Shown: piece after piece, positions 4,329 through 45,257 of the stretch | How positions within the stretch are numbered: the stretch's first letter is position 1 | Layout of the letters: each line of letters starts with the position of its first letter | Sequence record: LR756504.1 | Direction: 5' to 3' (one strand) | Length of the DNA stretch: 64,000 nucleotides | Position numbers and translations under genes: made by a program | The notes under the pieces: generated by a model | Seen by the model: the letters and a program-made list of their open reading frames with translations, nothing else | Told to the model about the DNA's origin: nothing | Database searches by the model: none

Positions 4329-4331
4329 CAG

Positions 4332-4359: not shown

Positions 4360-4377
4360 AATAAAGATAAAAAAGAT

Positions 4378-5070: not shown

Positions 5071-5074
5071 AGGT

Positions 5075-5305: not shown

Positions 5306-5571
5306 TAGAGAGAAGATTTAATTCAGGTTTTAAACCAGGTGATAGAGTTAAAGTAAACTATAAGATGGTTAGTAAAGGACAATTACTAACTGTTAGAGAT
5401 AAAATTTTAACAGTGAAAGAGGTTAAGCATCACATTAGTCATTATTGGATAGTTTACTTTGTAGAGGAAAATAAATTTTATGAATTGGATAAAGGGTTAT
5501 TAAATATTCTATTAATTAAAGTAGATATTAGAGATGATAGAAGATTAAGAATTAGTTCATTGAAATTATAG
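5302..5571 (+). CDS. KOW/SH3-like C-terminal-tag protein
   Basis: FKPGDRVKV; ends DDRRLRISSLKL*. Confidence 0.75.
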   Translation: MIERRFNSGFKPGDRVKVNYKMVSKGQLLTVRDKILTVKEVKHHISHYWIVYFVEENKFYELDKGLLNILLIKVDIRDDRRLRISSLKL

Positions 5572-5826: not shown

Positions 5827-6132
5827 TTAAATATTTAGATTGTTTATTTTAGATAATCTATTATTTAGAGTATTGTTTATTTGGAATATATCTTCAGAGT
5901 ATTTACAAATTGACCAACCATAACCATTTGTATCTTGTATAGCGAAATGTGGTGTATAACCTTCTTTGTGAATATACTCTATATTTTTTATAGTTAGAGT
6001 ATACGGATATTTGACTTTATTCATACCGTATATACCACCAGCACAATTTGACCAACTATATGGATATTTTAGTATAGTTACTCTATCACCTGCTTTTAAA
6101 TCTGCAAATTTTAAATAACTCATATTAGTCAA
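5827..6132 (-). CDS. YPYT/DTNGYGW family tagged protein
   Basis: GDRVTILKYPYSWS..KYPYTLTI..HFAIQDTNGYGWSI; ends NNRLSKINNLNI*. Confidence 0.85.
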   Translation of the reverse strand: MTNMSYLKFADLKAGDRVTILKYPYSWSNCAGGIYGMNKVKYPYTLTIKNIEYIHKEGYTPHFAIQDTNGYGWSICKYSEDIFQINNTLNNRLSKINNLNI

Positions 6133-6541
6133 TTAATTTCCATTTTTTAATTTCGAACTGTTTGAATTCTGTAGCTGTATCTTCGGTTATATTAATTTTT
6201 CTCCATTGATAAGTACTGCTATAAATAAACCAAGCCACATCATAGTTATTACCATCAGATACAAGTACATCTATTCCTTCAGGTGGATAAGTATCATAGT
6301 TATTGATTTCAATATCAATCCATTTAACAATATCTTTTTTAAGGATTTGTTGTTTCTTGTCTTTGATGATAGAGTATGTAGTTCTATAAGGTTGATAGTT
6401 TACGTGAGCATCAACACGTTCATCATCAATATAGAATTCGGGAAGGACTTTTCTAATACCTTCAGGTAAACCAGGTGATTGTTTATAAACCTCTAATAGG
6501 ATTCTATTATCAGGTAGATTATGTGTGATAGTGAAATTCAT
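6125..6541 (-). CDS. Protein with C-terminal DUF551-like domain
   Basis: WI....YPPEGIDVLVSDG..YDVAW...W pattern. Confidence 0.55.
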   Translation of the reverse strand: MNFTITHNLPDNRILLEVYKQSPGLPEGIRKVLPEFYIDDERVDAHVNYQPYRTTYSIIKDKKQQILKKDIVKWIDIEINNYDTYPPEGIDVLVSDGNNYDVAWFIYSSTYQWRKINITEDTATEFKQFEIKKWKLID

Positions 6542-6708
6542 ATTAGTATTCCCAAATGGTTAATATATCGTCTAATTTATCATCAATTTTGTATAGCGTT
6601 CTATTATCCAATTTTTCTTCAAATTCTTCGGATAGATATTTTTTTATTTTATCTAATTTATTGTTGATGATGAACAATTTGATTTGTTCTTCTTTAGTTA
6701 GTGCCATA

Positions 6709-7002
6709 TTATATGTTTAAGTTCTCTATTCTATTTTTTCTATTAATTAAAATATTGTTTCTTTGAAATAAAAATACAGTTTCACTATTAATAGCCCAAC
6801 CAAAACCATTAGTATCTTTTATAGCAATATGTGGCATCCAAGCATATCTATTATACGTTATATTATCTATCGTTAGTAGATATGGATATTTAACTTTATA
6901 TCGTTTATCTATACCACCAGCTGCACTAGACCAACTATTTGGATAATTTAAGATAGTTACACTATCCCCAACTTTTAAGTCTTTAAAATGTAAATAGTTC
7001 AT
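6709..7002 (-). CDS. YPYT/DTNGYGW family tagged protein
   Basis: Ends INRKNRIENLNI*. Confidence 0.85.
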   Translation of the reverse strand: MNYLHFKDLKVGDSVTILNYPNSWSSAAGGIDKRYKVKYPYLLTIDNITYNRYAWMPHIAIKDTNGFGWAINSETVFLFQRNNILINRKNRIENLNI

Positions 7003-7286
7003 TCTTCAATATTTAAGTTGTCTATTCTATTTTTTCTATCGTTTAGAACATCGTTCTTTTCAAATAGATGATATGTTCTTCTATTAATTGACCAACAATA
7101 ACCATCTGTGTCATCTATGGATATAGCTAAATGTGTACCACCACATCCTATATCACATATTTTATTTATAATAAAGGTGTATGGATATTTTAACTTTCCA
7201 TTATTAAACCAATCCCATAAAGGAGGTTCACATAGAATAGTTACTCTATCGCCTACTTTTAAATCGGTGCAATTTAAATCTATCAT
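6999..7286 (-). CDS. YPYT/DTNGYGW family tagged protein
   Basis: Ends NDRKNRIDNLNIEE*. Confidence 0.85.
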   Translation of the reverse strand: MIDLNCTDLKVGDRVTILCEPPLWDWFNNGKLKYPYTFIINKICDIGCGGTHLAISIDDTDGYCWSINRRTYHLFEKNDVLNDRKNRIDNLNIEE

Positions 7287-7537
7287 TTATTTGAATTCTT
7301 TTGAATAATTCTTTCTAACTTTTTAAAATTTTTTACAATAGTTCTTTCTACTTGAGATAATGCGGTATCAATTTTAGAATCATCCATGTTATCTACAACT
7401 TGATGGTAGGTAAGTTCATCTATATTATCAGAAGGCTTTTTATACATTCGTTTAAATAGATTTATTTGTGGTTCTGTACATTGGAATAGTAATCTCTTTA
7501 GAGTATCCTTTCCAAATTTAGCTAATGTTTGATTCAT
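7283..7537 (-). CDS. Hypothetical protein
   Basis: 84 aa, overlaps both neighbours in the operon. Confidence 0.7.
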   Translation of the reverse strand: MNQTLAKFGKDTLKRLLFQCTEPQINLFKRMYKKPSDNIDELTYHQVVDNMDDSKIDTALSQVERTIVKNFKKLERIIQKNSNK

Positions 7538-7799
7538 TTAAGTTGTTTATTCTATTTTTTCTATCATTTAAAACATTATTTTTTCCAACTAGATTGTAAT
7601 TAATTTCATCAATTAACCAACTACGATTATCATTATCTTTAACAAGTATTCTCGTTTCATTAAAAGTATTTACACGTAATATATATTCTATAATAAATGT
7701 ATAAGGATAAACTAATACATTTCCATAGAAAGTAGGTTTGTTTGGGATAGTTACTCTATCACCAATTTTTAAATCATTAATAAAGTTTGAATATGTCAT
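7518..7799 (-). CDS. YPYT family tagged protein (divergent)
   Basis: GDRVTIP..YPYTFII; ends NDRKNRINNLNESNIS*. Confidence 0.8.
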   Translation of the reverse strand: MTYSNFINDLKIGDRVTIPNKPTFYGNVLVYPYTFIIEYILRVNTFNETRILVKDNDNRSWLIDEINYNLVGKNNVLNDRKNRINNLNESNIS

Positions 7800-7800
7800 A

Positions 7801-8280
7801 TTAAAATAGTCTAACTTCGTCTATTGGAACTTTATAGAAATCTTTTAGAATACCTTTTACAATTAAATCAAATTTTCTATTACCACCATAAAGTTCTATA
7901 TCAGTTTTTTGATTTAAAGACGTAGTATCAATACCCATTCTTCTTGGATGTAAATAGAATTTCTTTTCTTGTATAAGATATTCCATAACGATAACACCAT
8001 TCTTTCTATATTCTTTTACAATATAAGGCTCTTCACCTTCATCAGTTATTTCTTCATCTCTTTCTGTAATAACTAAGTCTTTGATTAATTTAATGAAATA
8101 ATTTTTGAAGGATTCTTTCTCATTATCTTCAACAACAACTTCTTCTGTTTTAGGCACATCTTTAGAATTGATGTTTTGTAATTCAGATATAACTTGTTTT
8201 ATTGCAAGTTTAGCAGTTTCTAAATCACCATCTTCAATTCTTTTAATAGATATATTTAATATTTTAGTTAGATGTTTCAT
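7801..8280 (-). CDS. Hypothetical protein
   Basis: 159 aa, in operon. Confidence 0.7.
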   Translation of the reverse strand: MKHLTKILNISIKRIEDGDLETAKLAIKQVISELQNINSKDVPKTEEVVVEDNEKESFKNYFIKLIKDLVITERDEEITDEGEEPYIVKEYRKNGVIVMEYLIQEKKFYLHPRRMGIDTTSLNQKTDIELYGGNRKFDLIVKGILKDFYKVPIDEVRLF

Positions 8281-8575
8281 TGTTTATATTATTTATTTTA
8301 TTTTTTCTATTTTCAATAATAGAATTTCTTGTGAAGATTTCTGCATTATCATTAATTATTGCCCAACCAAAACCATTAGTATCTTGTATAGCTAAATGAG
8401 GTAAGTATTGCTTATTTCTATTTTGGTGAGATACACTTTTTATAGTTAATGTATATGGGTATTCAACTTTATCAACACCATATGTTCCACCATCAAGATG
8501 TGAATATACGTATGGTTCTTTTAGTATAGTTACTCTATCACCTGGTTTTAAGTCTATAAAACTTAAATAGCTCAT
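8264..8575 (-). CDS. YPYT/DTNGYGW family tagged protein
   Basis: Ends ENRKNKINNINNETSN*. Confidence 0.85.
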   Translation of the reverse strand: MSYLSFIDLKPGDRVTILKEPYVYSHLDGGTYGVDKVEYPYTLTIKSVSHQNRNKQYLPHLAIQDTNGFGWAIINDNAEIFTRNSIIENRKNKINNINNETSN

Positions 8576-13601: not shown

Positions 13602-13633
13602 CAAAGATACTACAATTTGTATTAAAATACAAA
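13602..13633 (-). promoter_or_regulatory. Bacteroidota-type promoter, leaderless
   Basis: TTTG-N20-TATCTTTG-N4-ATG; contains the dyad TTTGTAT-N4-ATACAAA. Confidence 0.88.
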
Positions 13634-19038: not shown

Positions 19039-19070
19039 CAAAGGTAGTTAATTTTGTATTAAGATACAAA
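19039..19070 (-). promoter_or_regulatory. Bacteroidota-type promoter, leaderless, with perfect dyad
   Basis: TTTG-N20-TACCTTTG-N4-ATG; TTTGTAT-TAAG-ATACAAA. Confidence 0.9.
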
Positions 19071-20371: not shown

Positions 20372-20544
20372 TGAGTAGAGTAAAATATGTAGCTAATAAA
20401 ATGATGGCAATAGTCCTTGGTGGCTGTGCGGGCGCAATGTTTAGTAACTTATTTACTAAACATACACCATCAATGGTTATATGTACTATAGTGGGAATGC
20501 TATTATACTACTTCGTAATAAGTAAAGAAAAAGTAAATGGATAG
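20371..20544 (+). CDS. Glycine-zipper-like small membrane protein (57 aa, not in ORF track)
   Basis: IVLGGCAGAM...IVGMLLYYFVI; resembles 21227. Confidence 0.6.
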   Translation: MSRVKYVANKMMAIVLGGCAGAMFSNLFTKHTPSMVICTIVGMLLYYFVISKEKVNG

Positions 20545-20806
20545 TTTTTCTAAATATAAAGATTGTACATATTTAATATGTCGTACTACATTTAAAACTG
20601 ATGTGTATGGATATGATGATGGATTAACTTATACATTTGAGAAAGGAGTTAAATATAAATGTATAGTTGGGAATAGTGGTAACTATATTATTTTTAAACC
20701 TATGGATGTATTGTTTAATACACTTGATAATAATACTGTTAATCAAATTACAGAAAACTTTTTTACTATAAATGAATATAGAAAATTTAAAATAGAGAAT
20801 TTATGA
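20537..20806 (+). CDS. C-terminal-tag protein (LIC..G.KY.C subfamily)
   Basis: Ends INEYRKFKIENL*. Confidence 0.85.
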   Translation: MDSFSKYKDCTYLICRTTFKTDVYGYDDGLTYTFEKGVKYKCIVGNSGNYIIFKPMDVLFNTLDNNTVNQITENFFTINEYRKFKIENL

Positions 20807-20973
20807 AAAAATTTAAAGAATATCTAATGATATTGATAATTATTTCAACAATATTTGGATTATTTGGTATTGTATTTGGTGGTGGTAGTTTTCTGTTCGG
20901 ATTTATTTTTGGGTTATTTTTATTTAATGCTTTATATCTATTGGATTATTTAATAAAAACAATATTTAAATAA
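20803..20973 (+). CDS. Gly/Phe-rich small membrane protein (56 aa, not in ORF track)
   Basis: FGLFGIVFGGGSFLFGFIFGLF; overlaps both neighbours. Confidence 0.6.
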   Translation: MKKFKEYLMILIIISTIFGLFGIVFGGGSFLFGFIFGLFLFNALYLLDYLIKTIFK

Positions 20974-21230
20974 TGAACAAGTTTTCTAAATATGTCGGTT
21001 GTAAATATTTAATCTGTCATACAACATTCACTACGAATGTATATGGTGGTACTCCAATTACATTTGAGAAAGGAGTTAAACATCTATGTGTAATAGGAGA
21101 AAGTGAGAATATTATTTTTGTATCTTTAGATATAATATTTGATAACACTGATGATAATGATGTTAAGCTTATTTATGAAAACTTCCATACACCAGTTGAG
21201 CACAGAAAATTTAAAATAGAGAACTTATGA
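20973..21230 (+). CDS. C-terminal-tag protein (LIC subfamily)
   Basis: Ends PVEHRKFKIENL*. Confidence 0.85.
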   Translation: MNKFSKYVGCKYLICHTTFTTNVYGGTPITFEKGVKHLCVIGESENIIFVSLDIIFDNTDDNDVKLIYENFHTPVEHRKFKIENL

Positions 21231-21421
21231 AGAATATATTGAAAGAATTTATGATTTCCTATAATATGAAGTCTACTAAAATAGCAAGAGCGGTAGTAAT
21301 GGGTGGTATTGTTGGTGCTTTAGTTGGTAGCTTAATATCTGAAACAGTTATACCAATGGCTATAGGTAGTCTATTAGGAATGGTAGGATATTATTTATTA
21401 TTGATGAAAGAGAATAATTAA
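21227..21421 (+). CDS. Glycine-zipper small membrane protein
   Basis: GGIVGALVG...GSLLGMVGYY. Confidence 0.7.
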   Translation: MKNILKEFMISYNMKSTKIARAVVMGGIVGALVGSLISETVIPMAIGSLLGMVGYYLLLMKENN

Positions 21422-21448
21422 AATTGATGTTAATAAATTATTAATATT

Positions 21449-21751
21449 GTGAATAAAAAACAACAAAAAGAAGAATATTATAAAATATATGGCGGTAAAA
21501 ATATCAACCCTAATCCTTTTCCTATTGGTAGTAAATTAAGACATCGTAATGGAACTGAAGAGGTTGAATTAATATCTTATAAAAATGAATTAATGATACT
21601 TATACCATTAAATGAAGCTGCTTTATATCATTATGATACAATGAATCCTGATATAATTGAATTTTCAAAAAAGAAAGGGTATAAGCCTAATATGGATAAT
21701 ACTACGCAATTACATTATATGTATGCTGATAGATATATTATAATAAATTAA
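21449..21751 (+). CDS. Hypothetical protein
   Basis: 100 aa, untagged. Confidence 0.65.
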   Translation: MNKKQQKEEYYKIYGGKNINPNPFPIGSKLRHRNGTEEVELISYKNELMILIPLNEAALYHYDTMNPDIIEFSKKKGYKPNMDNTTQLHYMYADRYIIIN

Positions 21752-21753
21752 TA

Positions 21754-22038
21754 ATGAATAAGTTTTCGGAATATAAGAATTGTAAACATTTAATTTGTTG
21801 TGAAACATTTGATACTGAAGCTAATGGTGTCGGGTTAGTGCCTAATATAAAGTTTACATTTGAAAAAGGTGCTAAGTATAGTTGTGAATATGTGAAATAT
21901 AACAATGATTATTTCATAAAATTTCCAACTCAAGATATAGCTTTTTATGGTGGTGATAATAATGATGTTAAACTTATTTATGAAAACTTTATGACTCTAA
22001 ATGAACACAGAAAAACTATTATAAATGAATTATTATGA
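21754..22038 (+). CDS. C-terminal-tag protein (LIC subfamily)
   Basis: Ends LNEHRKTIINELL*. Confidence 0.85.
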   Translation: MNKFSEYKNCKHLICCETFDTEANGVGLVPNIKFTFEKGAKYSCEYVKYNNDYFIKFPTQDIAFYGGDNNDVKLIYENFMTLNEHRKTIINELL

Positions 22039-22304
22039 ATGTAGATGATTTGAAAAATTTAAATTATTTGATATGTGTAAAAACGCATATGTATAAAGAA
22101 GAACTTGAATATTTACAAGGTATAAAATATAAATGTAAATTTGAAGAAGGAAAAAATTATAATTGTATCTATATTGAATATCCTGATGGTAGTGGATGGC
22201 GTAAGATGTTATTAAGTGATAATGATATTGTTATCGAATATTGTAGAAACCATTTTATGACAAAATCAGAATATAGAAAGTATATAATAAATGAACTATT
22301 ATGA
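22035..22304 (+). CDS. C-terminal-tag protein (LIC subfamily)
   Basis: Ends KSEYRKYIINELL*. Confidence 0.85.
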   Translation: MNVDDLKNLNYLICVKTHMYKEELEYLQGIKYKCKFEEGKNYNCIYIEYPDGSGWRKMLLSDNDIVIEYCRNHFMTKSEYRKYIINELL

Positions 22305-22528
22305 AGAAAGAATATATATTACTTTGTAAAAAATCTAATGGAAATTTTATAAAAGGTAGAAAGTATAATAGTACGTTTGATGGTTATAATCTTTATATTG
22401 AATTATCTGAAGGTAAACAAACATTAATATCAATGTCGAGATATAACGACGAAAATCTTAAATATATTGAAGAACATTTTACAACAGTTAATACACATAG
22501 AAAAAATATTATAGATTCAATTGAATAA
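22301..22528 (+). CDS. C-terminal-tag protein (LIC subfamily)
   Basis: Ends VNTHRKNIIDSIE*. Confidence 0.8.
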   Translation: MKKEYILLCKKSNGNFIKGRKYNSTFDGYNLYIELSEGKQTLISMSRYNDENLKYIEEHFTTVNTHRKNIIDSIE

Positions 22529-22833
22529 TGAAACCTATTAAACATAACGATATTCCTAATGCAACTACAGACTTAGATATGTTTCTTACTTATTTAAATA
22601 AGAATAAGATAGCATATTCTAAGTATGATATTGTTAGTAATATAGGTGATATTATTTGCGTGGTATGGGAAAATAAAAAAGAAGACTATTATGTAGATAT
22701 ATTTGCTGGTGAAAATTACTATGATATATTTACTAATGGGAAAAGAATAGAAACTACATTCCCTAATGCAGGATGCTATAGTATGGATATAGACTCAGTA
22801 ACAGAATTATTATTAAGCTTAGATTATTTATGA
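22528..22833 (+). CDS. Hypothetical protein
   Basis: 101 aa, untagged, overlapping junctions. Confidence 0.7.
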   Translation: MKPIKHNDIPNATTDLDMFLTYLNKNKIAYSKYDIVSNIGDIICVVWENKKEDYYVDIFAGENYYDIFTNGKRIETTFPNAGCYSMDIDSVTELLLSLDYL

Positions 22834-23093
22834 AATTTGATAGATTTAAAAACGTAAATACTTTAATATGTATAAAAACACATAGTAAATTTTCTATGCA
22901 TGGTAAATTAGAATACTTAGCTGGTAGAAAGTATAAATGTGCATTAAGTACAGTTAATGATGTAATTAATATTTTTAATGATAATGGCCATTGTAGTATA
23001 GCAACTTATAATGAAAATTCTATTAACTACTTTAGAGAACATTTTATAACAATAGCAGAATATAGAAAGTCTATTATAGAAGAATTATTATGA
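22830..23093 (+). CDS. C-terminal-tag protein (LIC subfamily)
   Basis: Ends IAEYRKSIIEELL*. Confidence 0.85.
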   Translation: MKFDRFKNVNTLICIKTHSKFSMHGKLEYLAGRKYKCALSTVNDVINIFNDNGHCSIATYNENSINYFREHFITIAEYRKSIIEELL

Positions 23094-23377
23094 TTGAAAT
23101 CATAGGTGAACATAGTAATGTGTATATAAATGAATTCAGGATTTCTATATGGATTGAAGAACCCATAAAACATTCAGGTACGATATCATTATATAGGGAG
23201 GCTAAAATAGAGTACTTCTACAATGGTAAAAAGAAACATGAAGTATTACACACATATAATGATGACCATGTTCTGATTTATTTAAGTATATTAGCTAATT
23301 ATTTAAAAGGAATAGCTGAATACTATGTACCAAGTATCCACGATTTGAGGAAAGGTAAAATAGATGAATTATTATGA
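23090..23377 (+). CDS. C-terminal-tag protein, paralog of 712
   Basis: Ends HDLRKGKIDELL*. Confidence 0.8.
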   Translation: MIEIIGEHSNVYINEFRISIWIEEPIKHSGTISLYREAKIEYFYNGKKKHEVLHTYNDDHVLIYLSILANYLKGIAEYYVPSIHDLRKGKIDELL

Positions 23378-23676
23378 ATTTAGACAAGTTTAAAAATATT
23401 AATAATGTAATATGCATAAAAACACATAAAAAATGTTTATATTGGAATAATGGTGAAGTAGAATATTTTGTTGGTAAAAAATATAAATGTGTAGTTAATA
23501 AGCATTCTGCTTATATTAACACTATAATACATTCATATGATGTTCTTCTTGTCAAAACGTCTGATGGAAATAGTAGTGGTGGTCCAATGGATAAGGAAGA
23601 TATTATTAAATACTTCTTAGAACACTTTATAACAATTGATGAACATAGAAAATCTATAATAGAGAAATTGATATGA
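23374..23676 (+). CDS. C-terminal-tag protein (LIC subfamily)
   Basis: Ends IDEHRKSIIEKLI*. Confidence 0.85.
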   Translation: MNLDKFKNINNVICIKTHKKCLYWNNGEVEYFVGKKYKCVVNKHSAYINTIIHSYDVLLVKTSDGNSSGGPMDKEDIIKYFLEHFITIDEHRKSIIEKLI

Positions 23677-23951
23677 TTGGATATATTGATAATGATTTAG
23701 ATAAGTATATAGGTACTCTAATATGTACGAAATCACACATAAGATATTCTATGCATGGTGAATTAAAATACTTAAAAAATGTAAAGTATAAATGCGAATT
23801 TGGTGTAGTTCGTGATGTAGTTAAGGTTTTTAATGATAATGGTTGTTATATTCTATCAAGTTATAATTATAATACTATTATCTATTTAAAAGAATTCTTT
23901 ATGACAGTTGTAGAATATAGAAAAACTATTATAGACAATATTGAGTATTAA
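23673..23951 (+). CDS. C-terminal-tag protein (LIC subfamily)
   Basis: Ends VVEYRKTIIDNIEY*. Confidence 0.85.
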   Translation: MIGYIDNDLDKYIGTLICTKSHIRYSMHGELKYLKNVKYKCEFGVVRDVVKVFNDNGCYILSSYNYNTIIYLKEFFMTVVEYRKTIIDNIEY

Positions 23952-23953
23952 TT

Positions 23954-24487
23954 ATGTGGTTAGAAAATATTAAGAAGAAATTAAATATTCAAAGCACTGA
24001 ACAAAAAAATATTGTTTCAGATGAATATACTATTGTTATGAATTTTATAAATGAAACCCAAAAGAAATGGGATAAACGTACAGATGATGAATATCAAAAG
24101 GATAAGGATAGATTTGAAAAAAGTCAAAATACATGTTCTGTCTGTGGTTCAACAAAAATAGTTAATAAGATAATATCACAAATTAAAACACGTACAAATT
24201 ATCCGAGGTTTGTTTTTCAACAACCTACAAAATATAGCTATTCGGTAAATGATGAAATAAGACATTGTTCTGATTGTGGTAATGAATGGTATAAAAGAAG
24301 CTGGTATGATTCATACTTCTATACAAAAAGAAGAAGTGATTTCAAATCTTTTCTAATTAAAAGAAAACATTTATTAAAAAGTTATACAGAAATTAATAAA
24401 CTGCATGCAGAAAGTTTATATAAAGCATTTGATAGAGAAATACCACTTTATCAATTAAGGTGTGATTTTAAATCTGTTTTTGAATAA
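23954..24487 (+). CDS. Zn-ribbon protein whose tag lies beyond an in-frame TAA
   Basis: CSVC and CSDC; the frame continues *YDRNIYELRKKFINDL* to 24538. Confidence 0.75.
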   Translation: MWLENIKKKLNIQSTEQKNIVSDEYTIVMNFINETQKKWDKRTDDEYQKDKDRFEKSQNTCSVCGSTKIVNKIISQIKTRTNYPRFVFQQPTKYSYSVNDEIRHCSDCGNEWYKRSWYDSYFYTKRRSDFKSFLIKRKHLLKSYTEINKLHAESLYKAFDREIPLYQLRCDFKSVFE

Positions 24488-24534
24488 TATGATAGAAATA
24501 TTTACGAATTGAGAAAAAAGTTTATAAACGATTT

Positions 24535-24789
24535 ATGATAAATGGATTTGATGGTATAGCAGTTTGTATAAAAACTCATAAGAAAGATACATACTTTGGT
24601 GAAATAGAATACATAGCTGGAAGTAAGTATATTATCAGTTTTGATAAAATTGGAGAATACTTATACGCTGTTATAAAAATACCAAATAGTACACAATGTG
24701 TTCATATTCGAATTGATGATGATTATGTATTAGAACACTTTATAACAATTGCAGAATATAGAAAAACTATTATAGAAAAATTAATATGA
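24535..24789 (+). CDS. C-terminal-tag protein (LIC subfamily)
   Basis: Ends IAEYRKTIIEKLI*. Confidence 0.85.
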   Translation: MINGFDGIAVCIKTHKKDTYFGEIEYIAGSKYIISFDKIGEYLYAVIKIPNSTQCVHIRIDDDYVLEHFITIAEYRKTIIEKLI

Positions 24790-25190
24790 TAGACATATCA
24801 AAAATTATAGAAGCATTATCACCATATCCAATATCATTGATATTCGGATATGGTAGTTCCTATGGATTTAATACTTCATTTGTTTCTTTACATTTTAAAG
24901 ATAATAATGATAATAGATTAAATAATTTAATTAAATTATTTTCAAATAGTTTAAATTTTTCAAAATTTAATATTTGTTTTATATCTAATAATATGTTAGG
25001 ATATAATAATGAAGATATAATTAAATATATGGATGATTTTATCACTGAAAGAAAAATAGGAACGAATAAAGTAATTATTATAAATTCTATAGAAGAATTG
25101 AACGAAATTATTAATATAATTTCTTTAATATTGACTGGTATATCTTATAAGAAAATTAAAAGAGATTTAATTATAAATGAAATATGTTAG
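24786..25190 (+). CDS. C-terminal-tag protein, paralog of 26941
   Basis: LSPYPISL start; ends YKKIKRDLIINEIC*. Confidence 0.8.
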   Translation: MIDISKIIEALSPYPISLIFGYGSSYGFNTSFVSLHFKDNNDNRLNNLIKLFSNSLNFSKFNICFISNNMLGYNNEDIIKYMDDFITERKIGTNKVIIINSIEELNEIINIISLILTGISYKKIKRDLIINEIC

Positions 25191-25235
25191 ATTATCTAGT
25201 CTAATTTAAATTAGACTCTATTTAAATAAAAGCCT

Positions 25236-25571
25236 ATGAAAAAGATAATAGTATGCCCAAAGTTATTAGTAGATGGATTAGCAATATTTCCTTTCATATT
25301 AGTTAAAGATGAAAGTTATCTATCAGACAAGAAATTGATTAATCATGAGAAGATTCATCTAAGACAGGAGATAGAATTATTGATTATTCCGTTTTATATC
25401 ATATATGGTATTAACTGGGTTATTAATTACTTTAGATATGGCTCATGGATAAAAGCATATAGTGAAATTATATTTGAAAGAGAAGCATACATTAATGATG
25501 CTGATTTAGAATATTTAGAGAATAGAAAACCTTTCTCTTTTATTAAGTATTTCTTTAATAAACCTATATAA
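25236..25571 (+). CDS. HExxH membrane-associated putative metallopeptidase
   Basis: LINHEKIHLRQ...IFEREAY. Confidence 0.7.
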   Translation: MKKIIVCPKLLVDGLAIFPFILVKDESYLSDKKLINHEKIHLRQEIELLIIPFYIIYGINWVINYFRYGSWIKAYSEIIFEREAYINDADLEYLENRKPFSFIKYFFNKPI

Positions 25572-25824
25572 TTATGAAAGAAAGTGATTTTAAAGAATTT
25601 CTATTAATTATAGGACTTATATTAGGATTAAGTTTAGTATATTATATATGGTTAATAATATAAAATAAATAATTATGAAAAAACCAACACCACCTCCAAC
25701 TCAATATATTAAAGAGGATTTTAATATGTATGGTAAAATAGTATTAATAGTAGCAGGATTACTATTAGGATATTCTATAGGATACTTTATCTTTATATTA
25801 GTTACTCTATAACTTGCTTTCTAT

Positions 25825-26061
25825 ATGAAAATAATTAAATCTATTGGTGAAATACTATTAGTTATATTAGCAATAATAGCTTGCTTATTAACGCCATTTT
25901 TAATATTTGGTCCAGTTATGCTATGTATAGAATATAAGACTTATTGGTTCTTATTAATATACCCGTCTTATTATTTAGGAATGTTTATACATATTTTTTT
26001 AAAAGAAAGATATTCTATTAATAATAGAAAACGTAAAATAAACAATTTAATTTCAGATTAG
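25825..26061 (+). CDS. Two-TM membrane protein with C-terminal tag
   Basis: Ends NNRKRKINNLISD*. Confidence 0.75.
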   Translation: MKIIKSIGEILLVILAIIACLLTPFLIFGPVMLCIEYKTYWFLLIYPSYYLGMFIHIFLKERYSINNRKRKINNLISD

Positions 26062-26062
26062 T

Positions 26063-26275
26063 ATGATACCATTTCAAAAAGGCGACAGAATAACACTTAA
26101 AATTGAGTATAATTTATCAAACAAAAGAGAAATATGTATAGTTAGAAATTGTGAACTATATTTTCATGGTATATACGCATTAGCTATTGAAGGTAAACCA
26201 TATACTACTTATGATAGTTCTTACTTTGAGAAAGTTAATGATAGAAAGGATAGAATAGATAATTTAAATCTATGA
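26063..26275 (+). CDS. KOW-like tagged protein (PF.GD subfamily)
   Basis: Ends NDRKDRIDNLNL*. Confidence 0.8.
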   Translation: MIPFQKGDRITLKIEYNLSNKREICIVRNCELYFHGIYALAIEGKPYTTYDSSYFEKVNDRKDRIDNLNL

Positions 26276-26487
26276 TTATGTTTATAAAGGGTGATAAAAT
26301 AGTTGTTAGGAAAGATATACCATTACATGTATTAAAAGATAAGGTAAGCACAGTTTTGTCTTGTTTTGAATATTATAAAGGATTATACATATTAACTATT
26401 GAGGGTAATTATAATATTTATAAACCTGATGATTTTGAGCTAGCTAATAATAGAAAATCAAGAATAGAAAACTTAAAATTGGATTAA
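26272..26487 (+). CDS. KOW-like tagged protein (PF.GD subfamily)
   Basis: Ends NNRKSRIENLKLD*. Confidence 0.8.
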   Translation: MIMFIKGDKIVVRKDIPLHVLKDKVSTVLSCFEYYKGLYILTIEGNYNIYKPDDFELANNRKSRIENLKLD

Positions 26488-26502
26488 CCTCTTTTCATTA
26501 CA

Positions 26503-26739
26503 ATGAGCAACGAATTACACTATATTGATGAATTTCGTATTTGTATTACATCATTTAAAATTAATGAATTTACATTTGAAAAAGGTAATATGTATAATGT
26601 GGATTTTATTGTTGATGAAATTTATAAAAAAGAGCTTAGTAATAGAGTGGAATGTATTGTGTTTTTATCAGATAACTTTCGAACAATACATGAATATAGA
26701 AAAATTAAAATAGAAGATATAAATAATGATACCATTTAA
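26503..26739 (+). CDS. C-terminal-tag protein
   Basis: Ends IHEYRKIKIEDINNDTI*. Confidence 0.8.
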   Translation: MSNELHYIDEFRICITSFKINEFTFEKGNMYNVDFIVDEIYKKELSNRVECIVFLSDNFRTIHEYRKIKIEDINNDTI

Positions 26740-26944
26740 ACCAGGTGATAAAGTAGTTCTTAAAAATGGTATGTTAACACCTAGATTAACAGAAGGTATT
26801 GTATATACAGTTTCTTCTTGTACTAAATATTCATCAATAGAATATCATATAGTAATTCTTGAAAATAGATTATCATTATTTTCAAGCGGTTATTTTGACA
26901 AAGTTGATAGTAGAAAGGATAGAATAGATAAACTAAATTTATGA
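26726..26944 (+). CDS. KOW-like tagged protein (PF.GD subfamily)
   Basis: FKPGDKVVL; ends DSRKDRIDKLNL*. Confidence 0.8.
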   Translation: MIPFKPGDKVVLKNGMLTPRLTEGIVYTVSSCTKYSSIEYHIVILENRLSLFSSGYFDKVDSRKDRIDKLNL

Positions 26945-27387
26945 AAAATAAAATAGAAAGCATATTGTCTCCATATCCAATAACTCTTGTGATAAGTGCT
27001 ACAAATTACGAATTTGTAAAAAATCCTGATTATTATCATACAAAATTTTATTTTTCAGATAATAAGCATAAATGGCTTAATTTAGTTAAAATATTTGAAG
27101 ATATGAATATTGATAATGTGAAATATAATTGTAATGAATATAACTATAAAACAAGTGTTGAAATTAGCAATTTAACTATAATAAAAAATATAGATGATTT
27201 TATAGCTGATAAAAGATTAGAAATAATATATTATAAAAATAAATATTTAAAAAGCTACAAATATATTAAAATAACTCTTAATTCAATAGAAGAAGTAGAA
27301 GAAATTATTAATATACTTGTATTTCTATTAACAGAACCATCATACAAGAAATTAAAAAGAAATACTATTATAAACGAATTATTATGA
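26941..27387 (+). CDS. C-terminal-tag protein, paralog of 24786
   Basis: Ends YKKLKRNTIINELL*. Confidence 0.8.
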   Translation: MKNKIESILSPYPITLVISATNYEFVKNPDYYHTKFYFSDNKHKWLNLVKIFEDMNIDNVKYNCNEYNYKTSVEISNLTIIKNIDDFIADKRLEIIYYKNKYLKSYKYIKITLNSIEEVEEIINILVFLLTEPSYKKLKRNTIINELL

Positions 27388-27605
27388 AACCATTCGAACC
27401 AGGTGATAAAGTAGTTATTAAAACTGATATACTATCGCATAGTTTAAAAGATGTAGTATGTACAGTCATAACTTGTTATCAACTATACATGAATATAGAT
27501 TATGTAGTAACTATAGATTACGATAATTTTTTATATTATGCTGATAATTTCATGAAAATTAATAATAGAAAACATAGAATTAATAGATTATATGAAAATA
27601 AATAA
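27384..27605 (+). CDS. KOW-like tagged protein (PF.GD subfamily)
   Basis: Ends NNRKHRINRLYENK*. Confidence 0.8.
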   Translation: MKPFEPGDKVVIKTDILSHSLKDVVCTVITCYQLYMNIDYVVTIDYDNFLYYADNFMKINNRKHRINRLYENK

Positions 27606-27840
27606 AAAGCTTATAGGAAATGTGTATGATGTAGTTGTAGATAGTAGAAAAGATGGTGTAAATTACTTAACTATTATTGATGTAATACGCAGTGAAAAAC
27701 AAATCAAATTATTAGATAATAATAATAAAGAATTGTATATACGCTATGATATATTTTTATATTTAGAGATAAATGATTATATAATTTATTCTAAAGATAA
27801 AAATAGAATTAGAAAAATTAAATCCATTATTAATGAATAA
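27592..27840 (+). CDS. Tagged protein (IGNVY pair)
   Basis: Ends KNRIRKIKSIINE*; paralog of 28078. Confidence 0.75.
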   Translation: MKINKKLIGNVYDVVVDSRKDGVNYLTIIDVIRSEKQIKLLDNNNKELYIRYDIFLYLEINDYIIYSKDKNRIRKIKSIINE

Positions 27841-28075
27841 TATTAAACCATTCGAACCAGGTGATATAGTGATTGTTAGAAAAGATATACTATCCCACAC
27901 ACTAAAAAATAAAGTATGTACAATTAGAACTTGTTATTATCACATAACAAAAAAAGAATATGTAGTATCTATTAAGAATGGTAGTAATCTTTATTTTGGT
28001 AATCTTTACTGTGCTCGTTATTTTGAGAAGTATAACAGTAGAAAAGACAGAATTGAAAGTCTTAATTTAGATTAA
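27833..28075 (+). CDS. KOW-like tagged protein (PF.GD subfamily)
   Basis: Ends NSRKDRIESLNLD*. Confidence 0.8.
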   Translation: MNNIKPFEPGDIVIVRKDILSHTLKNKVCTIRTCYYHITKKEYVVSIKNGSNLYFGNLYCARYFEKYNSRKDRIESLNLD

Positions 28076-28077
28076 AT

Positions 28078-28353
28078 ATGGCTAAACCTGATGATATTAT
28101 TAAAATAGGAAATGTATATAATATAGTTAGAGATAATGATAGAGGTATATTTAAGGGGATAGAACTCTTAACTATAACTAATATTATGCATATTGATAGA
28201 GAAATTGTTGATAGAACAATTGAATCAATATTATCTAATGGTAAAGCATATGATATGAATTATGAAATGTTTCACTTTTTTCATAGAAATAAACATTTAG
28301 AATATTCAAAAGAAAAAACAAGAATTAGAAAGATAGAGTCATTAACTGAATAA
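28078..28353 (+). CDS. Tagged protein (IGNVY pair)
   Basis: Ends KTRIRKIESLTE*. Confidence 0.75.
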   Translation: MAKPDDIIKIGNVYNIVRDNDRGIFKGIELLTITNIMHIDREIVDRTIESILSNGKAYDMNYEMFHFFHRNKHLEYSKEKTRIRKIESLTE

Positions 28354-37586: not shown

Positions 37587-38744
37587 TTAGGCTTCATATT
37601 GATTATAAATCATATTGATTCTTTCCTCGGTATATTGACATGTAAGCAAATAACTATCAACTTTCTGAGAAGGTAATTCAAACATAACATCACTCATGAT
37701 TTTCTCACAAATTGCTCTAAGTCCTCTAGCACCCAATTTAAATTCCAATGCTTTTTCAGCAATACATGCAATTGCATCTTCTTCTATTTCAAGCTTAATG
37801 TTATCAAGAGCGAATAATCTCACATATTGCTTCAATATAGAATTTCTAGGTTCAGTTAAAATTAATTTCAATGTTTCATTAGTAAGAGCATCCAAATGAG
37901 TTAGTATCGGCAAACGCCCCAACAATTCAGTTATTAATCCGAATTGAATTAAATCTTGTACAGCAATACATTTCAATAGATTATCTTCGTTGATTGCTTG
38001 TGGAGTTTTGCTAGTGAATCCAACTTTACTATTCACATTCAATCTATTACGGATTATATCTTTAATACCACCAAAAGCACCACCTGAAATGAAAAGAATA
38101 TTATCAGTATTCATTACCATCTCATTTTCAATGGCTTGTTTCTTACTTGGCTTTAGATTAACTATACTGCTTTCAAGTATTTTCAATAATGCTTGTTGTA
38201 CACCGACACCCGCTACATCAAGCATTTGTGTTCCTTGAGTTCGTTTCTTAGCAATTTTATCAATTTCGTCAATATAGACAATACCTTTTTCTGCTTTTTT
38301 AATATCGAAATCCGATGCTTGTAATAAACGATATAAAATACTTTCAACATCTTCACCAGTATAACCTGTTTGAGTTAATGTAGTTGCATCTACAATGCAA
38401 AATGGAACATCGAGAATTTTAGCAAGAATTTTAATCAAGTACGTTTTACCTGTGCCTGATTCACCAATCATAATAACATTGGATTTTTCGATAATTACAT
38501 CATCTTCATCTTTACAAGGATTGTTAATTCTCTTATAATGATTGTATGCTGCGACAGCAATAGTTTTCTTTGCTTCATCCTGACCAATAACATATTGATC
38601 CAAAAATTCTTTGATTTGTATAGGTTTTAAATCAAATGTTGGCGCTGCTTTTTTTATGAAATCTGGCTTAGAAGCCTTTTTGATAATTTTTTTAGGAAGT
38701 GGTTCAATCACTCTTTTTTTCTTCTTTTTGAATATTGTCTTCAT
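37587..38744 (-). CDS. clpX: ATP-dependent Clp protease ATPase subunit ClpX (no zinc-binding domain)
   Basis: LDQYVIGQDEAKK..AYNHYKRI, Walker A GESGTGKT, YIDEIDK, GVQQALLK, LFISGGAF, VGF loop, GRLP, GARGLR. Confidence 0.95.
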   Translation of the reverse strand: MKTIFKKKKKRVIEPLPKKIIKKASKPDFIKKAAPTFDLKPIQIKEFLDQYVIGQDEAKKTIAVAAYNHYKRINNPCKDEDDVIIEKSNVIMIGESGTGKTYLIKILAKILDVPFCIVDATTLTQTGYTGEDVESILYRLLQASDFDIKKAEKGIVYIDEIDKIAKKRTQGTQMLDVAGVGVQQALLKILESSIVNLKPSKKQAIENEMVMNTDNILFISGGAFGGIKDIIRNRLNVNSKVGFTSKTPQAINEDNLLKCIAVQDLIQFGLITELLGRLPILTHLDALTNETLKLILTEPRNSILKQYVRLFALDNIKLEIEEDAIACIAEKALEFKLGARGLRAICEKIMSDVMFELPSQKVDSYLLTCQYTEERINMIYNQYEA

Positions 38745-38748: not shown

Positions 38749-38779
38749 CAAATATACTAATAATTGTGATAAATACAAA
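38749..38779 (-). promoter_or_regulatory. Bacteroidota-type promoter, leaderless (clpX)
   Basis: TTTG-N19-TATATTTG-N4-ATG. Confidence 0.8.
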
Positions 38780-43489: not shown

Positions 43490-43810
43490 TTATTTATATA
43501 GATTATCTATTCTTTTCTTCCTTTTAGTCAAAGCATCGTCACCACCATACATCATGGTTCTATATTTTTGATATTGATATTCAAATGAATTTTCAAATAT
43601 TATATTACTATAACCATACGTCTTATCAACCAAATCATTAGAATAATCTGATATAGGATCAGCAGATATTACGATTCTATCAGATGTAATTTGTTCAGTA
43701 TCAGGCACAGTATAGCATATTAATTCACTTTCTCTAATAGAATTCGATAAATAATTATTAAGATATTCTACTACATCTATTCCCACTGTTGATTTATTTT
43801 TATCTTTCAT
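43490..43810 (-). CDS. C-terminal-tag protein
   Basis: Ends TKRKKRIDNLYK*; N-terminal GIDVVEYLNNYLSNSI. Confidence 0.75.
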   Translation of the reverse strand: MKDKNKSTVGIDVVEYLNNYLSNSIRESELICYTVPDTEQITSDRIVISADPISDYSNDLVDKTYGYSNIIFENSFEYQYQKYRTMMYGGDDALTKRKKRIDNLYK

Positions 43811-43828
43811 ATTATGTCATTTAAAATT

Positions 43829-44182
43829 TTAAATATTATTATCAATGATATACAACCTATGTTCTGTGATAGTCATATAGTTATTCATAATGTAATCCAC
43901 TGTATGATTAAAATATGATGCAACATAATATCGTTTATTATCCTCGTTAATAAAAATGGTAATAAAATCCTTTTCTAACTTAAAAAGATAATGCGTTTCA
44001 ATAGATACTTTCTTACCTGTTTTTTTAGAATAAATATGATTTAATCCTATGAACTTTTTTAACTTCTGATAATTTATAGCACAATCTTTATCATATTTTT
44101 TATTTACAGACTTTTTTCGATCAAAAAATGTGTATATAAAATCAATAATATTAAAATATAGGCTGTATATCTTTTTAATCAT
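43829..44182 (-). CDS. Tagged protein (KFI..IY.K..G trio)
   Basis: Ends ITEHRLYIIDNNI*. Confidence 0.8.
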   Translation of the reverse strand: MIKKIYSLYFNIIDFIYTFFDRKKSVNKKYDKDCAINYQKLKKFIGLNHIYSKKTGKKVSIETHYLFKLEKDFITIFINEDNKRYYVASYFNHTVDYIMNNYMTITEHRLYIIDNNI

Positions 44183-44432
44183 TACATAATTTATTTATAA
44201 TAGTTTCTCTATGTTCAGATGGTGTTATATAGTTATCCAATACGTATTTCACATGTGTATCAAAACTAGAAGTATAAAAATCTCTATTAACATGATCATG
44301 AACATGAATTATATATGGTTCAAATTTATGAAAATCTCTCACTGAAACAAAAACCTTCTCACCAGTAGATTTACGATATATGTATTTTAAACCAATGAAC
44401 TTTTTAAACTTATTATAACTTTCTTTACTCAT
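44175..44432 (-). CDS. Tagged protein (trio)
   Basis: Ends PSEHRETIINKLCND*. Confidence 0.8.
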   Translation of the reverse strand: MSKESYNKFKKFIGLKYIYRKSTGEKVFVSVRDFHKFEPYIIHVHDHVNRDFYTSSFDTHVKYVLDNYITPSEHRETIINKLCND

Positions 44433-44701
44433 AATAACTCATTTATAATAGCTTCTCTATGTTCTGTAATAGTCAAGTAATTACTTAATAGTCGTTCCAC
44501 ATCTTCGTTATATAAAGAATTAAAAAGATGTATTCCATCACCAACTAGTATGTGAATACTATAGTCATAAATGTTATATTTAATCGGAATTTTAATACCT
44601 CTATATTTACAATATACGAATTTATCTTTTATAAACTTTTCGAATATTGAATAATTTATAGCACGTTGTTTAGTATTAATACTATCTATCATACCGCTCA
44701 T
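44429..44701 (-). CDS. Tagged protein (trio)
   Basis: Ends ITEHREAIINELL*. Confidence 0.8.
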   Translation of the reverse strand: MSGMIDSINTKQRAINYSIFEKFIKDKFVYCKYRGIKIPIKYNIYDYSIHILVGDGIHLFNSLYNEDVERLLSNYLTITEHREAIINELL

Positions 44702-45047
44702 TTTTTATAAACATCTACATCTATAAAATACTTCTCATTACACTCTGCGCTATAATTACCATCCAATGATATTACAAAACATAATCCACTAAGTCTAGTA
44801 GCAAGTATTCTATACTTCTCATTCTTGATTAAACTACTATTAGTTTCACCTATATACACTCTAACCATATATCAATTTGTTTTACCTATTAAAGGTAATA
44901 ACTTAATATAGTTTAACGCATACAGATGTTTAGGTACTGTATGATTCCACTCTTTTTTAATGGATATTTTATGATTAGATGTTGCTAATAAAACAACTAT
45001 AATAGCAAACATTAAATACGCGATAAGTTTTAATTTCATATTTTACA

Positions 45048-45257
45048 TTAATCTAAATTCAATTTATTTATTCTATATCGTCTATAATCACTTACCTTAA
45101 TAAACAAATGACATTTCTGTATACCACCATATCCACTCGCACCACCATCAAAAGTCATATACCATGTATTATTTATTTCACCACACGCTCTAACAGTATA
45201 TACAACTTCAGAATTCTTTATGGATACTACTCTATCCCCTATATTAAATGGTTTCAT
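45048..45257 (-). CDS. KOW-like tagged protein
   Basis: PFNIGDRVV; ends SDYRRYRINKLNLD*. Confidence 0.8.
   Translation of the reverse strand: MKPFNIGDRVVSIKNSEVVYTVRACGEINNTWYMTFDGGASGYGGIQKCHLFIKVSDYRRYRINKLNLD

What the first reader, a model, noticed from the sequence alone, without database searches (positions are those of the whole stretch)
37587..38744. Phage ClpX with rewired substrate-recognition loops but an intact ClpP-docking loop
Seen: the N-terminal C4 zinc-binding domain is replaced by about 37 Lys-rich residues; pore-1 is GYTG instead of GYVG; pore-2 is LDVAGVG instead of RDVSGEG; the RKH loop is replaced (LKPSKKQAIE). Walker A/B, the Arg finger (GRLP), sensor-2 (GARGLR) and the ClpP-binding VGF loop are retained. 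Established: the ZBD binds adaptors, and the GYVG, pore-2 and RKH loops set ssrA-tag specificity. Inference: an early, leaderless-expressed unfoldase that borrows host ClpP and has new specificity, and the obvious candidate reader of the C-terminal tag library. No clpP is present in the window.
Basis: partly seen in the sequence, partly recalled or inferred. Interest (0 to 1): 0.68.

Follow-up and report, generated by a model that had tools for sequence, protein, structure and literature searches.

The report
Rewired zinc-finger-less ClpX of a megaphage
A 636-kb gut megaphage encodes a working-looking ClpX protein-unfolding motor that has lost its adaptor-binding zinc domain and changed the loops that choose substrates; the phage also carries its own ClpP proteases, so it probably runs a private protein-degradation machine with its own target preferences.

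Summary
Window 37587-38744 (-) is an intact 385-aa ClpX-family AAA+ gene. It passes both NCBIfam ClpX equivalog cut-offs and has no zinc-binding domain. Its pore-1 motif is GYTG, its pore-2 loop is MLDVAGVG, and the RKH loop is shortened to KKQ. Walker A/B, the Arg finger, sensor-2 and a VGF ClpP-docking tripeptide are retained.

These loops are nearly invariant in about 270 other ClpX sequences from Bacteroidota, metagenomes and phages. The changes define a five-member, phage-borne clade under strong purifying selection (dN/dS 0.09). Four of the six residues that read the ssrA Ala-Ala-COO- degron in E. coli ClpX are changed, so altered degron specificity is a reasonable inference.

The idea that it borrows host ClpP is weakened. 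The window is bases 1-64000 of LR756504.1, a curated 636-kb Mahaphage. Elsewhere that genome encodes two catalytically complete ClpP paralogues, a tmRNA and SmpB. Two clade members have lost the IGF tripeptide, so ClpP coupling is not universal in the clade.

The "C-terminal tag library" is real, with 75 tagged ORFs genome-wide and none in Lak-B2. Tagged ORFs lie on the contigs of four of five variant ClpX genes. The link to ClpX is correlative only.

Verdict: a new variant of a known kind, moderately interesting.

The parts
37587..38744 (-). clpX-family gene, 385 aa, intact frame
   Evidence: dN/dS 0.086 against the 88%-identical relative
38749..38779 (-). Bacteroidota-type promoter-like motif (TTTG, 19-nt spacer, TAnnTTTG) that ends 4 nt before the ATG
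   Evidence: (27 matches in the window against 4.8 expected)
38628..38744 (-). Residues 1-39: Lys-rich tail (13 K, 1 R, no Cys) in place of the C4 zinc-binding domain
   Evidence: AF2 pLDDT below 50 for residues 1-33; no PF06689 match
38442..38465 (-). Walker A GESGTGKT (residues 94-101)
38355..38366 (-). Pore-1 loop GYTG (residues 127-130; E. coli Y153 kept, V154 changed to T)
38259..38273 (-). Walker B IDEID (D159, E160)
38202..38237 (-). Pore-2 loop QGTQMLDVAGVG (residues 170-181; E. coli T199 to M, R200 to L, S203 to A, E205 to V; V202 kept)
   Evidence: numbering from PMC7652416 and PMC10638403
38136..38153 (-). RKH-loop equivalent KPSKKQ (residues 198-203; the GG is deleted and RKH becomes KKQ)
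38016..38024 (-). ClpP-docking tripeptide VGF (residues 241-243)
   Evidence: VGF, LGF, MGF and VGY all occur in canonical ClpX
37908..37919 (-). Arg finger GRLP (R277)
37716..37733 (-). Sensor-2 GARGLR (R340)

Best explanation
This is a functional ClpX-family AAA+ unfoldase encoded by a 636-kb Bacteroidota-infecting Mahaphage (LR756504.1). It belongs to a small phage-restricted clade that descends from Bacteroidota-type ClpX. [quoted passage not shown]

Inferred mechanism:
- Hexamers hydrolyse ATP and pull polypeptides through the axial channel with Y128.
- In this phage the VGF loops dock on ClpP. The most likely partners are the phage's own two ClpP paralogues, and host ClpP is possible as well. 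Together they would form a phage-private ClpXP.
- It lacks the N-domain and differs at four of the six residues that read Ala-Ala-COO-. It is therefore predicted not to use SspB-type adaptors, to bind ssrA-type tags poorly, and to select a different, phage-relevant set of substrates.
- A host-type promoter abutting the start codon suggests early transcription by host RNA polymerase, possibly as a leaderless mRNA.

Shown: family membership, motif states, clade restriction, purifying selection, and clpP, tmRNA and smpB in the same genome.

Inferred: ClpP docking, altered specificity, and timing.
For: - Family and motor. The AF2 model has mean pLDDT 81, with only the N-tail, the pore-2 loop and the IGF loop at low confidence, as expected for flexible loops.
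- Clade: P0001-P0004 and P0006 share no zinc-binding domain, TQTGY[T/V/M]G, [LI]DV[ASG]GVG and, in four of the five, KPSKKQ (P0004 has a different shortened loop). The clade is monophyletic with SH-aLRT 100 on a long stem (0.64). It sits inside a 99-supported group with Bacteroidota and Lak ClpX.
- Purifying selection: dN/dS 0.086 at dS 0.82 against the closest relative, and 0.17 against the 69% relative.
- Only one ClpX gene and no zinc-binding domain occur in the whole genome.
- Two ClpP paralogues match solved ClpP at E = 6e-75 and 5e-57, with the catalytic Ser, His and Asp aligned.
- The genome also has a tmRNA (65 bits, tag ending MAVAA) and SmpB.
- Specificity residues come from PMC7652416. 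T199A/V, V202A and H230A raise KM strongly. Human ClpX has Leu at the T199 and H230 positions and does not degrade ssrA substrates.
- Pore-2 changes shift the closed/open channel balance and the preferred degron class (PMC10638403, PMC12723719).
- Promoter.
Against: - No direct evidence of ClpP binding exists. clpX and the clpP genes lie more than 250 kb apart.
- Two of the five clade members (P0003, P0006) lack the IGF tripeptide. The function conserved across the clade may therefore not need ClpP.
- T199 is kept in three of the five members, and R228 to K is conservative. Loss of ssrA reading is therefore not a clade-wide certainty.
- The phage tmRNA tag still ends in Ala-Ala.
- The Lak ClpP and this phage's ClpP N-terminal loops are alike. 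I saw no sign that the pore-2 change tracks a changed ClpP.
- The leaderless spacing is not conserved in the nearest relative.
Confidence: 0.55

Rival explanations
1. This is an early unfoldase that docks on host ClpP. It reads the C-terminal peptide motif (R-K-x-[R/I]-I-[E/D]-x-L near the C-terminus) carried by dozens of small phage proteins and so times their destruction.
For: - The motif is real and strictly C-terminal. In the window, 45 of 178 ORFs carry it in the last 15 residues, against 0.5 expected from 6 internal matches.
- Genome-wide, 75 ORFs carry it, and 44 of them lie in the 0-80 kb region that contains clpX.
- Synonymous variation at the Leu and Glu/Asp codons indicates selection on the peptide.
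- Tagged ORFs lie on the contigs of four of the five variant ClpX genes. This includes two ORFs directly downstream of P0004. Counts are 19/64, 2/4 and 1/7 on the relatives' contigs.
- Controls are near zero: 1/401 around canonical phage ClpX loci and 0/816 in the whole Lak-B2 genome.
- The basic-hydrophobic motif loosely resembles the MuA C-motif-2 degron. Open-channel pore-2 variants prefer that degron class (PMC12723719).
Against: - All carriers belong to one phage lineage, so the co-occurrence may be shared ancestry.
- The motif lies 0-6 residues from the C-terminus, which does not suit recognition anchored on the alpha-carboxylate.
- Its hydrophobic spacing suggests an amphipathic helix that could dock on any common partner.
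- The P0003 contig has no tagged ORF in 12 kb.
- P0006 keeps a tag but has no IGF tripeptide, so degradation cannot be the universal outcome.
- The phage has its own ClpPs.
Confidence: 0.15
2. This is a ClpP-independent remodelling or translocating chaperone. It would disassemble or unfold specific complexes, for example in replication, virion assembly or protein packaging. The IGF loop in this member would be a dispensable leftover.
For: - P0003 and P0006 of the same clade lack the IGF tripeptide.
- A second viral ClpX-like lineage (L187, L191-L193) has no zinc-binding domain, no RKH loop and a deleted IGF loop.
- Jumbo-phage ClpX has been proposed as a translocase or assembly aid (PMC7824862).
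- ClpX and ClpP were found in phage G particles (PMC12484599).
Against: - VGF is conserved in the two closest members under strong purifying selection.
- LGF is kept in P0004.
- This genome keeps two ClpPs.
Confidence: 0.2
3. This is a decoy or poison subunit. It occupies host ClpP, or mixes into host ClpX rings, and so blocks host ClpXP-dependent turnover or defence without processing its own substrates.
For: - The VGF loop is retained while the degron-reading residues are changed.
- The promoter is of the early, host type.
Against: - All ATPase motifs and the pore-1 tyrosine are conserved under purifying selection across 55-87% identity. A passive decoy would not need them.
- The phage's own ClpPs argue for productive use.
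Confidence: 0.06
4. This is a decaying or non-functional ClpX remnant.
For: It has lost a domain and the canonical loops.
Against: - The frame is intact.
- dN/dS is 0.086.
- Every catalytic motif is invariant in the clade.
- The derived loop states are themselves conserved among members that are only 55-67% identical to the query overall.
Confidence: 0.02

Closest known systems
Bacterial ClpX (E. coli and Bacteroidota; TIGR00382 / PRK05342)
   Same: Same AAA+ module with Walker A/B, Arg finger, sensor-2, pore-1 tyrosine and an IGF-type ClpP-docking loop. It is 54-58% identical to Bacteroidota ClpX and scores above both equivalog cut-offs.
   Different: No C4 zinc-binding domain. GYVG becomes GYTG, ITRDVSGEG becomes QMLDVAGVG, and PPQGGRKHP becomes KPSKKQ. 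Four of the six ssrA-reading residues are changed.
Engineered E. coli ClpX-deltaN, and the deltaNPS and RKH-loop mutants
   Same: An N-domain-less ClpX is an active unfoldase that still works with ClpP. Pore-2 and RKH changes re-weight degron classes (PMC12723719, PMC10638403, PMC7652416).
   Different: Those are laboratory constructs with one region changed at a time. Here all regions are changed together in a natural, conserved lineage, and pore-2 loop length is kept.
Human mitochondrial CLPX
   Same: A natural ClpX without the RKH signature and with non-Thr and non-His residues at the T199 and H230 positions. [quoted passage not shown] It matches the query at E = 1.7e-83.
   Different: It is eukaryotic. 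By my own knowledge, not tested here, it keeps a zinc-binding N-domain. It is not closely related to this clade.
ClpX and ClpP of Lak megaphages and other jumbo phages (Atu_ph07, phage G)
   Same: Huge phages encode ClpX and ClpP. Lak phages, from the same Mahaphage clade, also carry tmRNA, SmpB and ClpP.
   Different: Lak ClpX is fully canonical, with a zinc-binding domain, GYVG, RDVSGEG, RKH and LGF. It is only 51% identical. Lak-B2 has none of the C-terminal tags.
Second divergent viral ClpX-like lineage (IMG/VR loci L187, L191-L193; Saprospiraceae MAG contig L268)
   Same: No zinc-binding domain, no RKH loop, and Val at the E205 position (DVNGVGVQQ).
   Different: It is about 300 aa with the IGF loop deleted entirely, and pore-1 is SAGY[A/V/Q]G. 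It is a separate, more reduced lineage.

Membership tests
ClpX (NCBIfam TIGR00382 / PRK05342 equivalogs) | Whole-protein HMM score above the curated cut-off | tested here: met
   450.3 bits against 359, and 411 bits against 370.75
ClpX | AAA+ motor motifs: Walker A, Walker B, Arg finger, sensor-2 | tested here: met
   K100, D159/E160, R277 and R340 are invariant in alignments A1, A4 and A5
ClpX | N-terminal C4 zinc-binding domain (PF06689) | tested here: not met
   No Pfam match. No Cys in residues 1-60. No match above the cut-off in the whole 636-kb genome.
ClpX | Pore-1 loop GYVG (aromatic-hydrophobic-Gly) | tested here: inconclusive
   The motif is GYTG. The tyrosine is kept and Val becomes Thr. 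The effect on grip or recognition is unknown.
ClpX | RKH loop (GGRKHP) at the channel entrance | tested here: not met
   KPSKKQ, two residues shorter. All 80 metagenome ClpX have GGRKHP.
ClpX | Canonical pore-2 loop (ITRDVSGEG) | tested here: not met
   QMLDVAGVG
ClpX | IGF-type ClpP-docking loop | tested here: met
   VGF at 241-243. Loop length is within that of Bacteroidales ClpX P0097. The tripeptide is absent in clade members P0003 and P0006.
ClpX | A ClpP partner is available | tested here: met
   Two ClpP genes lie in LR756504.1 at 370879-371409 (+) and 291828-292355 (-), and none lies in the window
ClpX | Physical binding to ClpP and ATP-dependent unfolding or degradation | not testable with these tools
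   This needs biochemistry. The one complex prediction gave no verdict.
HslU | HslU equivalog score | tested here: not met
   204 bits against a cut-off of 362, matched in three separate stretches

The most novel reading that the evidence does not exclude
The rewired ClpX and the C-terminal R-K-x-[R/I]-I-[E/D]-x-L motif form a phage-private recognition system. About 75 small proteins carry the motif, and they cluster around clpX. The motor, with ClpP where the IGF loop is kept, would selectively unfold, clear or deliver the tagged proteins. Having lost ssrA-type reading, it would not be swamped by host quality-control substrates. This would be a natural, orthogonal degron-unfoldase pair that evolved inside a virus.
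Probability: 0.18. Interest if true: 0.85.

Novelty: new variant of a known kind. Interest (0 to 1): 0.52.

Why it matters
How ClpX chooses substrates is understood in detail only for the ssrA tag. [quoted passage not shown] This clade is a natural experiment in which all four elements changed together while the motor, and in most members the ClpP link, stayed under selection.

If its specificity is really new, it offers two things:
- a way to test which loop residues encode degron choice;
- a candidate orthogonal degradation module for Bacteroidota.

It also shows that a Mahaphage that already had a complete trans-translation and ClpXP kit replaced or remodelled one part of it. If the link to the large family of C-terminally tagged small proteins holds, it would reveal virus-encoded, tag-directed control of an early proteome.

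Tried and rejected
- Complex prediction of ClpX(40-385) with two copies of Bacteroides thetaiotaomicron ClpP gave no verdict (score 0.15 against a mark of 0.34). I do not count it for or against binding.
- The phage's own ClpP could not be submitted to that tool, and I did not send it elsewhere afterwards.
- ARAGORN missed the tmRNA. Infernal found it.
- The metagenome scan used generic ClpX peptides and returned only canonical ClpX. More distant members of the variant clade may therefore exist unseen.
- I did not run the large representative-protein search, so the count of five members is a lower bound.
- A back-translated DVxGVGVQQ pattern scan found no further clade member. In bacterial genomes it gave mostly chance matches in high-GC DNA. 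It also found three otherwise canonical ClpX with E205V alone and one member of the second divergent lineage.
- The search for related loci with tag family B failed for lack of a conserved stretch. With family A it found only this same phage.
- PHROGs, Pfam and the ESM Atlas gave no function for the tagged proteins or for the clpX neighbours.
- I considered that the pore-2 change tracks a changed ClpP N-terminal loop and found no support. This phage's and Lak's ClpP N-terminal segments are very similar.

Full report
WHAT IS THERE.
- Window 37587-38744 (-) is a single intact ORF of 385 aa. Only four more sense codons lie upstream before a stop.
- It is a ClpX. It scores 450 and 411 bits against the two NCBIfam ClpX equivalogs, above their cut-offs of 359 and 371.
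- Pfam finds AAA_2 plus the ClpB_D2-small domain. Residues 40-361 align to solved ClpX chains at E = 7e-100.
- An AlphaFold2 model built on 54 homologues has mean pLDDT 81. Only residues 1-33, the pore-2 loop (170-176) and the IGF loop (242-247) fall below 50, as expected for flexible parts.

- Residues 1-39 are Lys-rich (13 K, 1 R, no Cys) and replace the C4 zinc-binding domain.
- No zf-C4_ClpX match passes its cut-off anywhere in the complete genome, and there is no second clpX.
- Walker A (94-101), Walker B (D159/E160), the Arg finger (R277), sensor-2 (R340) and a VGF docking tripeptide (241-243) are present.
- Pore-1 is GYTG, pore-2 is QGTQMLDVAGVG, and the RKH loop is KPSKKQ, two residues shorter than canonical.

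HOW UNUSUAL THIS IS.
- Among the 120 best hits of the 5.8-billion-protein word search, 116 have GYVG and 115 have RDVSGEG.
- All 80 metagenome ClpX loci have GYVG and GGRKHP, and all 80 keep R, D, V, G, E and G of RDVSGEG.
- About 60 of 70 phage ClpX from IMG/VR are fully canonical. So is ClpX of the related Lak megaphages.
- The exceptions in the top list are the query and four relatives: P0002 at 88%, P0003 at 69%, P0004 at 65% and P0006 at 58% local identity.
- All five lack the zinc-binding domain. All have TQTGY[T/V/M]G and [L/I]DV[A/S/G]GVG, and four have KPSKKQ, while P0004 has a different shortened loop.
- On a tree the five are one clade (SH-aLRT 100) on a long stem of 0.64 substitutions per site. 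The clade sits in a 99-supported group with Bacteroidota ClpX and Lak ClpX, whose internal order is unresolved.
- The gene is under strong purifying selection. dN/dS is 0.086 at dS 0.82 against P0002's gene, and 0.17 against P0003's.
- The loops are therefore a conserved, derived state and not decay. They are not usual in host or phage ClpX.
- Val at the E205 position alone occurs sporadically in otherwise canonical bacterial ClpX.

WHERE IT SITS.
- The window is bases 1-64000 of LR756504.1. This is one of the four largest curated, circular phage genomes (636 kb). It belongs to the Mahaphage clade with the Lak phages and is predicted to infect Bacteroidetes (PMC7162821).
- The IMG/VR record offered as the window's own genome is only 348 kb and holds no clpP.
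- The full genome holds two complete ClpP paralogues, at 370879-371409 (+) and 291828-292355 (-). They match solved ClpP at E = 6e-75 and 5e-57, with the catalytic Ser, His and Asp aligned. There is also a shorter ClpP-like protein.
- It also encodes a tmRNA (65 bits) whose tag (P0121) ends in MAVAA, and SmpB.
- Lak phages have the same kit with a canonical ClpX. Lak-A1's ClpX even carries an intein at Walker B.
- So the phage need not borrow host ClpP, though nothing excludes that it also can.

WHAT THE LOOP CHANGES MEAN.
- Walker B E185 and the Asn195-Pro196-Ser197 and Thr199 landmarks fix the numbering offset at 25.
- The six E. coli residues shown to read the ssrA Ala-Ala-COO- are Y153, V154, T199, V202, R228 and H230 (PMC7652416). 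Here they are Y128, T129, M174, V177, K201 and Q203.
- T199A/V, V202A and H230A raise KM strongly. Human ClpX has Leu at the T199 and H230 positions and does not degrade ssrA substrates.
- The pore-2 loop also closes the channel. Shortening it favours an open channel, weakens ssrA recognition, and improves recognition of N-motif and MuA-type C-motif-2 degrons (PMC10638403, PMC12723719).
- By established knowledge, the N-domain tethers SspB-type adaptors and some substrates (summarised).
- The inference is adaptor-independent substrate choice shifted away from Ala-Ala tags.
- Caveats: three clade members keep Thr at position 199, R228K is conservative, and the entry collar stays basic.

ClpP COUPLING.
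- VGF lies within natural variation. LGF, MGF, VGF and VGY all occur in canonical ClpX.
- The loop is as long as in a Bacteroidales ClpX.
- P0003 has the loop deleted, and P0006 has no [ILMV]G[FY].
- A second, more reduced viral ClpX-like lineage lacks the loop altogether.
- ClpP coupling is therefore likely in this phage but is not a fixed property of the clade. A ClpP-independent remodelling role is the main rival.

EXPRESSION.
- A Bacteroidota-type motif (TTTG, 17-22 nt, TAnnTTTG, usually extended to TTTGTAT...TACAA...) occurs 27 times in the window against 4.8 expected.
- One copy lies at 38749-38779 (-) and ends 4 nt before the clpX ATG.
- The same 4-nt spacing recurs at 8 genes in the window and 16 in the genome, 13 of them in the first 100 kb. 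Lak-B2 has none.
- By my recollection of the Bacteroides promoter literature, transcription would start at or next to the ATG. This supports a leaderless mRNA made by host polymerase, but it is not shown.
- P0002's gene keeps the motif with an 18-nt spacer.

THE TAG LIBRARY.
- Dozens of 60-150-aa ORFs end in E-[Y/H]-R-K-x-I-I-E-x-L-L or N-x-R-K-x-R-I-x-N-L-N-L.
- In the window, 45 of 178 ORFs have the relaxed motif in the last 15 residues, against 0.5 expected from internal occurrences.
- Genome-wide, 75 ORFs carry the strict motif. 44 of them lie in 0-80 kb around clpX.
- Leu and Glu/Asp codons vary synonymously, so the peptide is under selection.
- Tagged ORFs occur on the contigs of P0002 (19/64), P0004 (2/4, directly downstream of clpX) and P0006 (1/7), but not P0003 (0/18).
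- They are essentially absent near canonical phage ClpX (1/401 in AT-rich loci) and absent from the whole Lak-B2 genome (0/816). Fisher's test on 3/29 against 1/401 gives p = 0.001.
- HMMs of the two families find 23 and 22 copies in this genome and none in Lak-A1 or Lak-B2.
- This is real co-occurrence, but within one lineage.
- The motif lies 0-6 residues from the end, and its hydrophobic spacing looks helical. A docking helix for some other partner is at least as likely as a degron. I put the tag-reader model at about 0.15-0.2.

VERDICT.
Altered specificity and early or leaderless expression are plausible. Borrowing host ClpP is unnecessary. The tag-reader role is untested.
- Phage ClpX and ClpP are known. 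I found no description of this combination of features in the searched literature. I class it as a new variant of a known kind.

Noticed in passing
window 221-5571 (+), 5827-8575 (-), 20537-28353 (+), 43490-45257 (-) and scattered; whole LR756504.1: Large arrays of 60-150-aa paralogous ORFs have varied N-terminal parts and a conserved, strictly C-terminal motif (E-[Y/H]-R-K-x-I-I-E-x-L-L or N-x-R-K-x-R-I-x-N-L-N-L). Counts are 45/178 window ORFs and 75 genome-wide, with 0 in Lak-B2. No Pfam or PHROG family matches. The ESM Atlas gives only SH3-like leads.
   Followed up: partly
window, e.g. 38749-38779 (-), 19039-19070 (-), 13602-13633 (-), 2413-2444 (-): An extended Bacteroidota-type promoter-like motif (TTTGTAT..TACAA..TAnnTTTG) occurs 27 times against 4.8 expected. 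In 8 window genes and 16 genome-wide the ATG starts exactly 4 nt after it, which suggests a class of leaderless transcripts. Lak-B2 has 23 motifs and none with this spacing.
   Followed up: partly
LR756504.1 280507-280863 (-) = L097 1501-1857; SmpB at 540105-540527 (+): The phage encodes a tmRNA (65 bits, missed by ARAGORN) with a 24-residue tag ending MAVAA (P0121), and SmpB. The Lak-A1 tmRNA tag ends RMAA. With ClpX and ClpP this makes a complete trans-translation and degradation kit.
   Followed up: partly
L097 2039-2114 (-) (LR756504.1, next to the tmRNA and a tRNA-Met): ARAGORN calls a tRNA of unassigned identity with a four-letter anticodon reading tcta. It may be a suppressor-type tRNA, of interest given the alternative coding reported for Lak phages.
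   Followed up: no
L002 2791-4998 (+) (Prevotella phage Lak-A1, MK250016.1): The Lak-A1 ClpX is 735 aa. An intein-like insertion of about 320 residues interrupts Walker B (DE | C...N | CDK). Lak-B2 has the uninterrupted 418-aa gene. A Cryptobacteroides ClpX (L221) has DECDK at the same place without an insertion.
   Followed up: no
G000 (IMG/VR record, 347857 bp) against LR756504.1 (636363 bp): The IMG/VR record that holds the window is labelled 100% complete with inverted terminal repeats. It covers only about half of the curated circular genome and misses clpP and the tmRNA. Absence calls based on it would mislead.
   Followed up: yes
L187, L191, L192, L193 (IMG/VR contigs) and L268 (Saprospiraceae MAG contig): A second divergent ClpX-like lineage of about 300 aa has no zinc-binding domain, pore-1 SAGY[A/V/Q]G, DVNGVGVQQ, no RKH loop and the IGF loop deleted. 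It is presumably a ClpP-independent unfoldase.
   Followed up: partly
LR756504.1 146269-146691 (+) = L010 1366-1920; Lak L008 and L009: A third, shorter ClpP-family protein (184 aa, 90 bits) is shared with Lak phages. It may be a prohead or other S14-type protease rather than a ClpX partner.
   Followed up: no
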